The notes under the pieces were generated by a model. It saw only the letters and a program-made list of their open reading frames with translations, did no database searches and was not told where the DNA came from. This document shows positions 758 to 11,667 of a stretch of DNA of 64,000 nt, one piece after another; position 1 is the first letter of the stretch, and each line of letters opens with the position of its first letter. Made by a program: the position numbers and the translations under genes. Location of the stretch: IMG/VR virus record IMGVR_UViG_3300032782_000001, positions 1-64,000 of that record; one strand, written 5' to 3'.

Positions 758-1012
758 TTACTTGGACTGGACAACCGTCACTTGGAACTCCGATCCGTCC
801 GTGAGACGGAGGACGAATCCGGCGTTGTTCGTGAGGACCATGGCCTCCTCGAAGGAGCGAAGGTCTGCACCGACCAGCACAGCCCCATCGTCCAAGCCGG
901 ACTCCACCTCGGTCGAAAGACCGATGGTCTCCTGAAGCAGAGTCGCCATTTCCATCTCGTCCATCGTAGCGATGACCTCACCGATCCGGGCCGTGTGTAC
1001 GCTCTTCGCCAT
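758..1012 (-). CDS. hypothetical protein
   Basis: MAKSVHT... after cassette at 1014-1059. Confidence 0.8.
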   Translation of the reverse strand: MAKSVHTARIGEVIATMDEMEMATLLQETIGLSTEVESGLDDGAVLVGADLRSFEEAMVLTNNAGFVLRLTDGSEFQVTVVQSK

Positions 1013-1073
1013 CGTCGTCACCTCCGACTCTGGATACGACGATGGCCGGCGGATTTTCGCTCCGCCGGCCATC

Positions 1074-1427
1074 GAGACTGCACACCCGCGCTTGCCGGTT
1101 CTCCGGCTCTCAGCAAAGTTTGGAGGCGGCCACCAGCCGCCCGCTTTGACCCTTCCTCATCGGCCTCCTCACTTTCTGCGCCAGACCTCCGGTCTGGGAG
1201 AGCGTTGACCTCACCTATCCACGCCGTGCGAGTTGTCTCTTAACTGGGGGCCGGAGAACGGCAGCTTCGATCTCCCACCGCTAGCTGACGATCTTACCCC
1301 ACCCGGCGGCCGCAAGCCGCGCGATATAACGCAATCGGACTGCCTTTCCTTCGTAGGAGGTTGGTTTCTAGGACCTGTATGCCGCCGCGCGGTGGCCGGC
1401 CACCGCGCTCTCCCCGCTTGCGATCTC
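1074..1427 (-). ncRNA. candidate structured ncRNA (~354 nt)
   Basis: own promoter motif at 1430-1455 with no canonical RBS/ORF; 5'/3' closing stem, two interleaved long-range stems, several local hairpins. Confidence 0.6.
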
Positions 1428-1450
1428 CGGTACGCCGCGCGTCGCCGAAC

Positions 1451-1585
1451 TTACGACCGGAGCAACGAGCCGATCGCCTCGCGCGTCTCCAGACAGATCG
1501 CCAGCTGCGCCTCGGTGATCTTGCCCTCGTCGTACCACGCGAGGATCTTCTTCACGCTGCTGAACCGCACGCTCTTCTTCGCCAT
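1451..1585 (-). CDS. small hypothetical protein (44 aa, MAKKSVRFSSVKK...)
   Basis: manual translation; preceded by cassette at 1590-1632. Confidence 0.7.
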   Translation of the reverse strand: MAKKSVRFSSVKKILAWYDEGKITEAQLAICLETREAIGSLLRS

Positions 1586-1644: not shown

Positions 1645-1684
1645 ATTCCCCTTTAAAATTGAACTGGGAATTTTAAAGGGGAAT
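1645..1684. repeat. 16-bp AT-rich inverted repeat between divergent promoters
   Basis: ATTCCCCTTTAAAATT-N8-AATTTTAAAGGGGAAT. Confidence 0.8.
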
Positions 1685-1749
1685 CCCTCGCCCAGCGGGC
1701 GCCGCAAATCCGACAGGGCCCGTCGTATCCAGGGACGGAGGTGATGACG

Positions 1750-2115
1750 ATGACGACGAACAACGCAGCGAGCTACCCGTTCCTCAGCAAGGCCCAGATC
1801 AAGGATCGCCTGGCCCAAGACCCGGACTTCGTCCGGGAGTGCGCCCTGATCATGCAGGATCGCCAGACGGCCTACGAGCAGGCCACCCTCACCACGAAGG
1901 ACCGCAACCGCAAGGGCTGGATGAGCAGCCACGCCGTCAACGGCGGCAAGCTCACCGCCAAGCTCCGCCAGGGAGAGGCCCTCGAAGCCGAGGAGTGGCT
2001 CAAGCTCCAGGAGATGGTCTCGCACTACGGCAAGCAGCTCGCGAGCCACTTCCGGGAGGCGGCCATCGAAGCCAACCCGACCCTCAAGGCCGCGGCCGCG
2101 ATCTTCGGCGTCTGA
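1750..2115 (+). CDS. hypothetical phage protein
   Basis: GC3-rich ORF after cassette at 1703-1745. Confidence 0.85.
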   Translation: MTTNNAASYPFLSKAQIKDRLAQDPDFVRECALIMQDRQTAYEQATLTTKDRNRKGWMSSHAVNGGKLTAKLRQGEALEAEEWLKLQEMVSHYGKQLASHFREAAIEANPTLKAAAAIFGV

Positions 2116-11592: not shown

Positions 11593-11667
11593 TGGACCGG
11601 AAGGGATTCGAACCCTCAGTTAGGAAGTTTTTAAAACCTCTGTGTCTGCCTTTTCCACCACCGGTCC
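11593..11667 (-). tRNA. tRNA-Leu(UAA) with short variable loop
   Basis: acceptor GGACCGG/CCGGTCC, Leu-type D arm, anticodon loop TTTAAAA, T loop TTCGAAT, discriminator A. Confidence 0.85.

What the first reader, a model, noticed from the sequence alone, without database searches (positions are those of the whole stretch)
1074..1455. Promoter-led ~354-nt pseudoknotted candidate ncRNA
Seen: a promoter motif at 1430-1455 (-) is followed by no canonical RBS or credible ORF. In transcript order, GAGAUCGCA (5' end) pairs with UGCAGUCUC (3' end). A = GGGAGAGCG (1414-1406) pairs with A' = CGCUCUCCC (1204-1196). B = UGCCGUUCUCCGGC (1263-1250) pairs with B' = GCCGGAGAACCGGCA (1107-1093). The order A-B-A'-B' is pseudoknot topology. 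Local hairpins: GCGCGGUGGCCGGCCACCGCGC, CCAGACC-GGA-GGUCUGG and GGCGGCU-GGU-GGCCGCC. I cannot match it to tmRNA, RNase P or intron consensus.
Basis: partly seen in the sequence, partly recalled or inferred. Interest (0 to 1): 0.75.

Follow-up and report, generated by a model that had tools for sequence, protein, structure and literature searches.

The report
Gene wreck behind live phage promoter
The stretch is a real ORF-less unit behind a genuine early promoter of a 436-kb phage, but it folds no better than shuffled sequence and carries relics of a neighbouring gene, so it is more likely a decayed gene cassette than a pseudoknotted RNA gene.

Summary
The window opens a 436,316-bp huge-phage record from a wetland metagenome. 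The motif at 1455-1429(-) belongs to a 61-member early promoter family (28.8 bits, rank 29; none in shuffled sequence). Seven leaderless genes of the family place the start at about G1421. No frame codes. This is the only intergenic sense promoter of the family with no start codon within 60 nt; the next gene starts 409 nt on.

The quoted helices exist, but the structure claim fails:
- Without the 14-bp hairpin at 1074-1040, which overlaps the next promoter, the body 1421-1075 has z = -0.01 against shuffles. Neighbouring windows average -1.6.
- Helices A-A' and B-B' are equal-energy alternatives.
- The 5'-3' closing helix lies mostly upstream of the inferred start.
- Rfam and ARAGORN find nothing here; a real tmRNA lies at 141.4 kb.
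- No homologue allows a covariation test, and no RNA run was listed.

Two relics point to a dead gene. Positions 1230-1201 are 25/30 identical, in phase, to codons 6-15 of the adjacent 84-aa gene. Positions 1296-1259 align to a cassette head with the -10 deleted and the ribosome-binding site mutated.

Verdict: most likely decayed early-gene cassettes, probably still transcribed. A functional RNA is not excluded (about 0.2).

The parts
1429..1455 (-). Early promoter 'P1452': -35-like CGTAAGTTCG (1455-1446), 12-nt spacer, -10-like CGTACC (1434-1429).
   Evidence: Position weight matrix built from 46 sites: 28.8 bits, rank 29 of 61 sites above 16 bits, with 0 such sites in shuffled genome. A cassette-head HMM matches only its promoter part, positions 2-37, E = 3e-4.
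1421..1421 (-). Inferred transcription start (G1421), the 8th base after CGTAYY.
   Evidence: Inference only. Seven leaderless-type members of the family all have ATG exactly 7 nt after CGTAYY. 54 of 61 promoters have a start codon less than 20 nt from this point.
1368..1415 (-). Degenerate SD-like GGGGAG (1415-1410), GTG at 1403, 11 codons, then TAG at 1370-1368. Possible stump of a dead gene, 'cassette A'.
   Evidence: The stop-free coding score of this frame is +0.20 for the first 11 codons and +0.13 for the next 28. The call is weak.
1387..1408 (.). 22-nt perfect palindrome (9-bp hairpin with a CCGG loop).
   Evidence: Not more stable than shuffles (z = -0.86).
1298..1363 (-). Block of about 66 nt that is alignable with metagenome contig L015. 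It ends in the hairpin GCGGCU-UGC-GGCCGC (1322-1304), which is the only conserved piece. A diverged second copy lies at 1142-1125.
   Evidence: blastn gives 70% identity over 70 nt. An exact 21-mer occurs in L015, which also holds a second, near-exact copy. The stem does not vary, so it gives no covariation.
1259..1296 (-). Relic of a promoter and ribosome-binding site, 'cassette B'. The -35-like GTAAGATCG is kept, the -10 is deleted, and GGAGGTGACG has become GAAGCTGCCG.
   Evidence: Local alignment to the head of the promoter at 437 scores 15.0, against 9.1 +/- 1.5 in shuffles; 2 of 300 reach it. The 4-way alignment A5 agrees. The profile HMM does not detect it. Suggestive only.
1201..1230 (-). 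Relic of N-terminal coding sequence: 25/30 identical, same strand and same codon phase, to 997-968 (codons 6-15 of the 84-aa gene). RTAWIGEVNA against HTARIGEVIA.
   Evidence: The maximum is 22/30 in 500 shuffles and 21/30 in 124 natural windows.
1021..1239 (-). Frame of that relic: 73 codons open, but no ATG, GTG or TTG before 1117. Taken as the body of dead ORF B.
   Evidence: The coding score of -0.02 lies between in-frame and off-frame values. phmmer against 1.84 G proteins gave only one repetitive, spurious hit.
1040..1074 (-). 14-bp GC-rich hairpin 'T1' with a 7-nt loop. Its loop and 3' arm hold the -35 element and spacer of the next promoter. Likely end of the unit.
   Evidence: Hairpins of the same design sit at 10 of 54 family promoters. 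No U-tract follows.
1033..1060 (-). Next early promoter 'P1056'. Its inferred start is G1025, at the ribosome-binding site of the 84-aa gene (1012-758).
   Evidence: 27.3 bits. The spacer also pairs with 1018-1008 across the start codon (inverted repeat I8).
1093..1118 (-). It is itself a hairpin, GCCGG-AGAA-CCGGC.
   Evidence: The close strain in run X2 has G1101 changed to U. That base sits in the loop of the local hairpin but mid-helix in B-B'.

Best explanation
The stretch is the wreck of one or two short early-gene cassettes of a huge phage, sitting behind a promoter that is still intact.

In this phage about 60 early genes are each built as a cassette. A promoter (AARTY, then CGTAYY 18 nt later) is followed by a start 8 nt after CGTAYY, GGAGGTGA at the 5' end of the mRNA, and a start codon 10-19 nt from the start. 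Often a hairpin overlaps the next promoter.

Here the promoter at 1455-1429 is intact. What follows is:
- a degenerate ribosome-binding site and an 11-codon stump;
- a short conserved hairpin at 1322-1304;
- a second cassette whose -10 is deleted, whose ribosome-binding site is mutated and whose start codon is lost. Its first codons are still recognisably paralogous to the adjacent 84-aa gene, and its frame is still open for 73 codons.

Shown from sequence: promoter membership, the absence of coding signal, the 30-nt in-phase relic, and the lack of excess RNA stability.

Inferred: RNA polymerase still starts near G1421. It makes an ORF-less early RNA of about 350-380 nt that ends at the 14-bp hairpin at 1074-1040, or else reads on into the 84-aa gene. 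This RNA has no structure-dependent function of its own.
For: - Promoter family: 61 sites above 16 bits against 0 in shuffled sequence, all within 429.8-436.3 kb and 1-45 kb. The candidate's site scores 28.8 bits. The motif recurs in related huge phages.
- 54 of 61 promoters have a start codon less than 20 nt from the inferred start. Only this one is intergenic and sense-oriented with none for 409 nt.
- No coding signal in any frame.
- Positions 1230-1201 are 25/30 identical and in phase with codons 6-15 of the next gene. Shuffles reach at most 22/30 and natural windows at most 21/30.
- Positions 1296-1259 align colinearly to a cassette head, with the -10 deleted and the SD mutated, at the right distance upstream of the coding relic. 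2 of 300 shuffles reach that score.
- The body 1421-1075 has z = -0.01, against a mean of -1.61 for the region.
- A-A' and B-B' have equal energy.
- The locus is hypervariable. Contigs whose neighbouring 124-aa protein is 75-78% identical carry other content or are cut there.
- No Rfam family and no tmRNA call here.
Against: - Only 30 nt of gene relic are statistically solid. The rest of the open 73-codon frame resembles nothing.
- The relic promoter is missed by a profile HMM. Its p of about 0.007 is not corrected for the five cassette heads tried.
- The promoter has not decayed, and phages tend to delete junk. Both argue that transcription of this stretch is still useful.
- A 21-nt hairpin is exactly conserved in a relative whose neighbouring protein is only 76% identical. 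At least that element is under selection.
- The stretch has more perfect helices than shuffles. Its strongest 30 x 30-nt duplex (-41.3 kcal/mol) beats all 100 shuffles and 98% of natural windows.
- No expression data of any kind were available.
Confidence: 0.5

Rival explanations
1. A functional early non-coding RNA specific to this lineage. It would run from about 1421 to the 1074-1040 hairpin, about 350-380 nt, or be a shorter species of about 120 nt ending at the conserved hairpin 1322-1304. It would act through sequence or short hairpins rather than a large fold, for instance as a decoy or sponge. It could have been exapted from dead cassettes.
For: - Intact promoter of mid-family strength with a unit-ending hairpin like those of coding units.
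- It is the only such ORF-less unit among 61 promoters.
- An exactly conserved 21-nt hairpin in L015, in a comparable position ahead of the next promoter.
- A 25/30 same-sense copy of the 5' coding end of the next gene's mRNA could mimic that mRNA.
- Giant phages are known to make short intergenic and 5'-UTR-derived sRNAs (PMC11512511).
Against: - z = -0.01 for the body.
- No homologue beyond one hairpin.
- No extended complementarity to any other place in the phage genome; the best blastn-short E-value is 2.
- No RNA run was listed.
Confidence: 0.2
2. A long 5' leader, or a second upstream promoter, for the 84-aa gene. Transcripts from about 1421 would read through. The 14-bp hairpin (1074-1040) would capture the segment 1053-1040, which would otherwise pair with 1018-1008 across the start codon. 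The gene would then stay translatable on long transcripts.
For: - Three-part arrangement: 1074-1061 pairs with 1053-1040 (14 bp), while 1046-1036 pairs with 1018-1008 (11 bp). The two pairings exclude each other.
- This is the only promoter of 54 that has both an upstream and a downstream partner for its spacer.
- No U-tract follows the hairpin.
Against: - The gene has its own full promoter with a canonical 13-nt leader.
- The 340 nt upstream of the hairpin would have no role.
- No riboswitch or leader family matches.
- The same hairpin design at other promoters looks like unit punctuation.
Confidence: 0.15
3. One reading: a large RNA with a specific pseudoknotted fold (order A, B, A', B') closed by pairing of its 5' and 3' ends, comparable in kind to tmRNA or RNase P RNA.
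For: - The helices exist.
- Adding the B-B' duplex (-34.5 kcal/mol) to a fold that keeps A-A' with the B arms free (-150.9) gives about -185 kcal/mol before any pseudoknot penalty. The nested optimum is -178.0. A pseudoknot is therefore not excluded.
Against: - No excess stability and no strand asymmetry.
- The closing helix is mostly upstream of the inferred start and weak.
- Arm B lies in a decayed ribosome-binding-site region and A' lies at the end of a coding relic.
- The one strain variant seen, G1101 to U, would break B-B' mid-helix unless compensated.
- No Rfam match.
- The phage has its own tmRNA elsewhere.
Confidence: 0.05
4. A DNA-level element, such as operator palindromes for a phage regulator or a recombination hot spot, rather than anything acting as RNA.
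For: - Folding statistics are as strong or stronger on the opposite strand.
- The 22-nt element at 1408-1387 is a perfect palindrome with no spacer.
- A separate 16-nt-arm perfect palindrome lies between the divergent promoters at 1645-1684.
Against: - The GC-rich palindromic octamers are not enriched here.
- No repeated operator-like consensus was found.
- This reading does not explain the gene relics.
Confidence: 0.1

Closest known systems
Pseudogenes and gene remnants in arrays of small early ('accessory') phage genes
   Same: The coding signal is lost. There is a short in-phase patch of similarity to a neighbouring paralogue. The -10 element, ribosome-binding site and start codon are gone. 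The locus has different content in related phages.
   Different: The upstream promoter is intact. Only 30 nt of relic are statistically secure. No intact orthologue was found to prove the ancestry.
sRNAs of giant Pseudomonas phages mapped by ONT-cappable-seq or dRNA-seq (201phi2-1: 11 sRNAs, 3 intergenic and 8 derived from 5' UTRs; PMC11512511. phiKZ: PMC8244752)
   Same: A promoter-led, ORF-less short transcription unit in the early region of a very large phage.
   Different: Those sRNAs are defined by measured 5' and 3' ends and were filtered to under 250 bp. Here there are no expression data, the promoter motif is unrelated, and there is no sequence similarity.
tmRNA
   Different: ARAGORN and Rfam find nothing here. 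The same genome has a bona fide tmRNA at 141,433-141,807 with tag ANDNGALRIAA. The candidate has no tRNA-like domain and no tag frame.
Cis-acting RNA elements just downstream of phage early promoters (lambda nut, HK022 put). Recalled from memory, not tested.
   Same: Stem-loops placed directly behind an early promoter.
   Different: Those elements are about 70 nt or shorter with defined stem-loops. The promoter here lies in the middle of the early array, not at its head. Nothing in Rfam matched.

Membership tests
Early promoter family of this phage and its clade | AARTY exactly 18 nt upstream of CGTAYY, and a matrix score above 16 bits | tested here: met
   28.8 bits, rank 29 of 61, with 0 sites in shuffled genome.
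Complete early-gene cassette of this phage | GGAGG at or next to the inferred start, and a start codon within 0-19 nt | tested here: not met
   The next SD-led ORF is 409 nt away. The cassette-head HMM aligns only positions 2-37, the promoter part.
tmRNA | tRNA-like domain and tag reading frame, as detected by ARAGORN or the Rfam models | tested here: not met
   No call at 1040-1460. The genome's tmRNA is at 141,433-141,807.
RNase P RNA, group I/II introns, ribozymes, riboswitches and known large phage or bacterial RNAs in Rfam 15 | Covariance-model score at or near the gathering threshold | tested here: not met
   The only window hit is a tRNA at 11,593-11,667. The best local hit is 19 bits against a threshold of 70, on the next promoter's hairpin.
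Structured non-coding RNA (generic) | Folding energy below that of dinucleotide shuffles | tested here: not met
   z = -0.01 for 1421-1075; regional mean -1.61. Single hairpins score z from -0.2 to -1.4.
Structured non-coding RNA (generic) | Compensatory base changes across homologues | not testable with these tools
   No homologue of the stretch was found. The one shared hairpin does not vary.
Intrinsic terminator | G+C-rich hairpin followed by a U-tract | tested here: inconclusive
   A 14-bp hairpin is present at 1074-1040. No U-tract follows it, and the scan makes no terminator call there.
Relic (pseudogene) of the 84-aa gene's paralogue | Colinear, in-phase similarity to the intact gene | tested here: inconclusive
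   Met for 30 nt (25/30), with suggestive support for the promoter and SD. Not met over the remaining 60 codons.
Sigma-70 consensus promoter | TTGACA, 16-18 nt, TATAAT | tested here: not met
   0 sites in 600-2600. Which polymerase or sigma factor reads the family motif is unknown.

The most novel reading that the evidence does not exclude
The debris has been exapted. The intact promoter would make an early RNA of about 350 nt that carries a near-copy (25/30 nt) of the 5' coding end of the neighbouring 84-aa mRNA, plus a conserved GC hairpin. This RNA would act as a decoy, titrating a host or phage factor (an RNase, RNA-binding protein or sRNA) that would otherwise act on that mRNA. That would be an mRNA mimic made from a dead paralogue in a huge phage.
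Probability: 0.08. Interest if true: 0.55.

Novelty: not a real feature. Interest (0 to 1): 0.2.

Why it matters
As an RNA gene, it probably does not matter. The pseudoknotted ncRNA is most likely an over-reading of G+C-rich, motif-repetitive debris.

The follow-up does give a useful map of how this uncultured 436-kb phage organises early transcription:
- about 60 near-identical promoter cassettes;
- a start site that can be inferred to the base from leaderless members;
- mRNAs that begin at the ribosome-binding site;
- hairpins fused to the next promoter.

It also shows that such cassettes turn over fast, leaving a live promoter in front of a dead gene. Promoter-led ORF-less stretches in huge phages should therefore be tested for cassette relics before being called ncRNAs.

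Tried and rejected
- **Rfam:** gathering thresholds on the window and E up to 10 on 900-1650. Only a tRNA elsewhere and sub-threshold noise.
- **ARAGORN:** no tmRNA or tRNA at the site.
- **DNA homologues:** none in the INPHARED phages, five related IMG/VR records, 61 metagenome loci around homologues of the neighbouring 124-aa protein, or Logan and ENA contigs of the closest neighbours.
- **17-mer of the conserved hairpin** across IMG/VR: 31 unrelated single hits with no family promoters, judged chance. A fuzzy search of the loci gave 18 hits against 9 in shuffles.
- **Flanking 84-aa protein:** no homologue among 5.8 G proteins. A 495-aa conserved protein found no close relative in IMG/VR.
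- **Alternative genetic code:** three in-frame TAGs in the GTG1403 frame. The genome does not support recoding: TAG ends 9 of 65 early ORFs, there is no tRNA-CUA, and the gain in ORF length is unspecific. TGA ends the conserved neighbouring gene. No other code was used.
- **Read-through with X at stops (P0073):** no homologue and no PHROG.
- **ORF B frame against 1.84 G proteins:** one hit to a 4-fold repeat in a 919-aa protein, judged spurious.
- **tblastx and blastp** of all frames against the early region: only promoter-derived junk.
- **Antisense targets** in the phage genome: none.
- **RNA runs:** none was listed. Contigs of a close strain (X2) cover only 1009-1162 of the candidate, with one substitution and one deletion.
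- **Whole-half duplexfold** proved a useless statistic and was replaced by 30-nt windows.
- **My crude gene caller** over-called gaps and was not used.
- **The promoter at +31789** looked like a second orphan but lies inside an ORF.

Full report
**Context.** The window is the first 64 kb of a 436,316-bp virus record. DNA runs from a wetland metagenome hold it. The record's ends overlap by 127 nt, so it is a circular assembly. It carries 49 tRNA genes and a tmRNA. The candidate lies on the minus strand between a 44-aa ORF (1585-1451) and an 84-aa ORF (1012-758), inside an array of small minus-strand genes.

**Promoter.** A motif recurs in front of these genes. In 46 of 70 seed sites AARTY starts exactly 18 nt upstream of CGTAYY.
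- A weight matrix built from these sites finds 61 sites above 16 bits, against none in shuffled sequence.
- All of them lie in 429.8-436.3 kb plus 1-45 kb. That is one contiguous early region of about 52 kb across the record's junction.
- The candidate's site, with AAGTT at 1452 and CGTACC at 1434-1429, scores 28.8 bits and ranks 29th.
- The motif also occurs in related huge phages.
- It is not a sigma-70 consensus. The phage encodes sigma-70-family proteins elsewhere. What reads the motif is unknown.
- Seven members are followed by ATG exactly 7 nt after CGTAYY. I take this as a leaderless arrangement that fixes the start at the 8th base. For the candidate that base is G1421.
- From that point 54 of 61 promoters reach a start codon within 20 nt. 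Most of their mRNAs begin at GGAGGTGA.
- Only three promoters have none within 60 nt: the candidate (409 nt to the 84-aa gene), one antisense to a gene at 433 kb, and one that lies inside an ORF.

**No ORF.** Every frame is interrupted. Codon-usage log-odds are negative in all six frames, while the neighbouring genes score +0.39 to +0.54.
- The three in-frame TAGs of one frame do not indicate recoding.
- The micro-ORF at AUG1160 (16 codons) has only 3 nt between GGAGG and AUG, against about 8 in real cassettes.

**Structure.**
- The stretch 1430-1040 gives z = -2.5, and its complement gives -3.4.
- Once the 14-bp hairpin at 1074-1040 is removed, the body 1421-1075 gives z = -0.01. Thirty-nine other windows of the region average -1.61.
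- Individual hairpins are not better than shuffles.
- From the inferred start, the optimum (-178.0 kcal/mol) uses B-B' (P about 0.8). Forcing A-A' gives the same energy.
- A pseudoknot is therefore possible but not needed.
- The closing helix is weak and mostly upstream of the start.
- Perfect helices are more numerous than in shuffles: 7 against 1.4. The best 30-nt duplex is exceptional against shuffles and sits in the top 2% of natural windows. These helices involve repeated GGCCG-type motifs, and other windows match the count.

**Homologues.** None was found for the stretch as a whole.
- One 1,071-nt contig, L015, has a neighbouring protein 76% identical.
- It shares a block of about 70 nt that ends in an exactly conserved 21-nt hairpin, with a second, near-exact copy elsewhere in L015.
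- The stem does not vary, so it says nothing about structure.
- In both genomes the hairpin lies ahead of the next promoter: 6 nt ahead of a relic promoter in the window and about 45 nt ahead of a live one in L015. It looks like the end of a unit.

**Relics.** Positions 1230-1201 are 25/30 identical to 997-968, on the same strand and in the same codon phase. Those positions are codons 6-15 of the adjacent gene.
- The best value is 22/30 in 500 shuffles and 21/30 in 124 natural windows.
- The frame is open from 1239 to 1021 but lacks a start codon. Its coding score is borderline.
- Upstream, 1296-1259 aligns to a cassette head with the -35 kept, the -10 deleted and the SD mutated, at the right distance. 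Two of 300 shuffles reach that score.
- A profile HMM does not pick this up.
- Behind the live promoter there is a degenerate SD, GTG1403 and 11 codons before a TAG. That frame has a mildly positive coding score.

**Unit end.** The 14-bp hairpin embeds the -35 element and spacer of the next promoter.
- Ten of 54 promoters have such an upstream arm.
- Nine of 54 have a spacer complementary to their own SD or start region.
- The hairpin is ordinary punctuation of this array.

**Conclusion.**
- The pseudoknotted ncRNA is not supported.
- The best reading is decayed early-gene cassettes behind a live promoter (0.5).
- Precedent for promoter-led sRNAs in giant phages exists (PMC11512511 and PMC8244752), but those rest on measured transcript ends, which are missing here.

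Noticed in passing
window 1-45,000 and genome 429,800-436,316 (both strands): A 61-member promoter family, cGyAARTyCG-N11-CGTAYY. The start can be inferred 8 nt after CGTAYY from seven leaderless members. Most mRNAs would begin right at GGAGGTGA. The motif is shared with related huge phages (L003, L004, L006).
   Followed up: yes
window, e.g. 437, 747, 161, 4517 and 17000 (-): In 9 of 54 promoters the spacer and -10 are perfectly complementary (9-14 nt) to the gene's own SD or start region. In 10 of 54 an upstream arm pairs with the spacer. Read-through RNA would sequester the SD, or be ended or processed there, while RNA from the gene's own promoter would not.
   Followed up: partly
window 1645-1684: A perfect inverted repeat with 16-nt arms (ATTCCCCTTTAAAATT, 8 nt, AATTTTAAAGGGGAAT) lies between the divergent promoters at 1629(-) and 1706(+). 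It is operator-like.
   Followed up: no
genome 141,433-141,807; 97-115 kb; 139,122-139,296: The phage has a tmRNA (tag ANDNGALRIAA) and a cluster of about 44 tRNA genes. Two adjacent tRNAs carry the UCA anticodon (called SeC by ARAGORN) and could read TGA. TGA nevertheless ends the conserved 124-aa gene next to the candidate.
   Followed up: partly
genome 432,995 (+) against gene 433,374-433,025 (-): A high-scoring family promoter (32.2 bits) points antisense into a gene for a small, apparently secreted or membrane protein. This is a likely antisense RNA.
   Followed up: partly
window 1741-2115 (+); genome about 434,010-434,386: The 124-aa protein (phrog_21015, function unknown) has a paralogue in the same genome (70% nt identity), several copies in a related 202-kb phage, and more than 70 metagenomic homologues. 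It is a marker family of this phage clade.
   Followed up: partly
L064:880-1335 (-) and L068:630-1090 (-): A family promoter is followed by about 330 nt that is roughly 95% conserved between two contigs, with single-base indels and no ORF. The stretch is A+T-rich with TATAGG/CCTATA palindromes. It is a better candidate for a conserved non-coding element than the finding itself.
   Followed up: partly
L050:3290-3853 (-): Another family promoter is followed by about 530 nt without an SD-led ORF. It is divergent from a homologue of the 124-aa gene.
   Followed up: no
window 961-1008 and 1054: The close strain in run X2 lacks 48 nt in frame (16 codons) near the start of the 84-aa gene. It also lacks one A in the next promoter's -35 run, which brings that promoter closer to the consensus.
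   Followed up: no
genome 153,201-153,842; 176,052-176,255; 369,715-370,065: Sigma-70-family genes (regions 2 and 4) lie outside the early region. They presumably serve middle or late transcription.
   Followed up: no
window 1137-1172 (-): The stretch GAGGAGG-CCG-ATG-AGG-AAG resembles the SD and start of the 44-aa gene's cassette (24 of 28 aligned bases, not significant alone). A -35-like GGAGGTCTGGCG lies at about 1190-1179. This may be a third cassette-head relic.
   Followed up: partly
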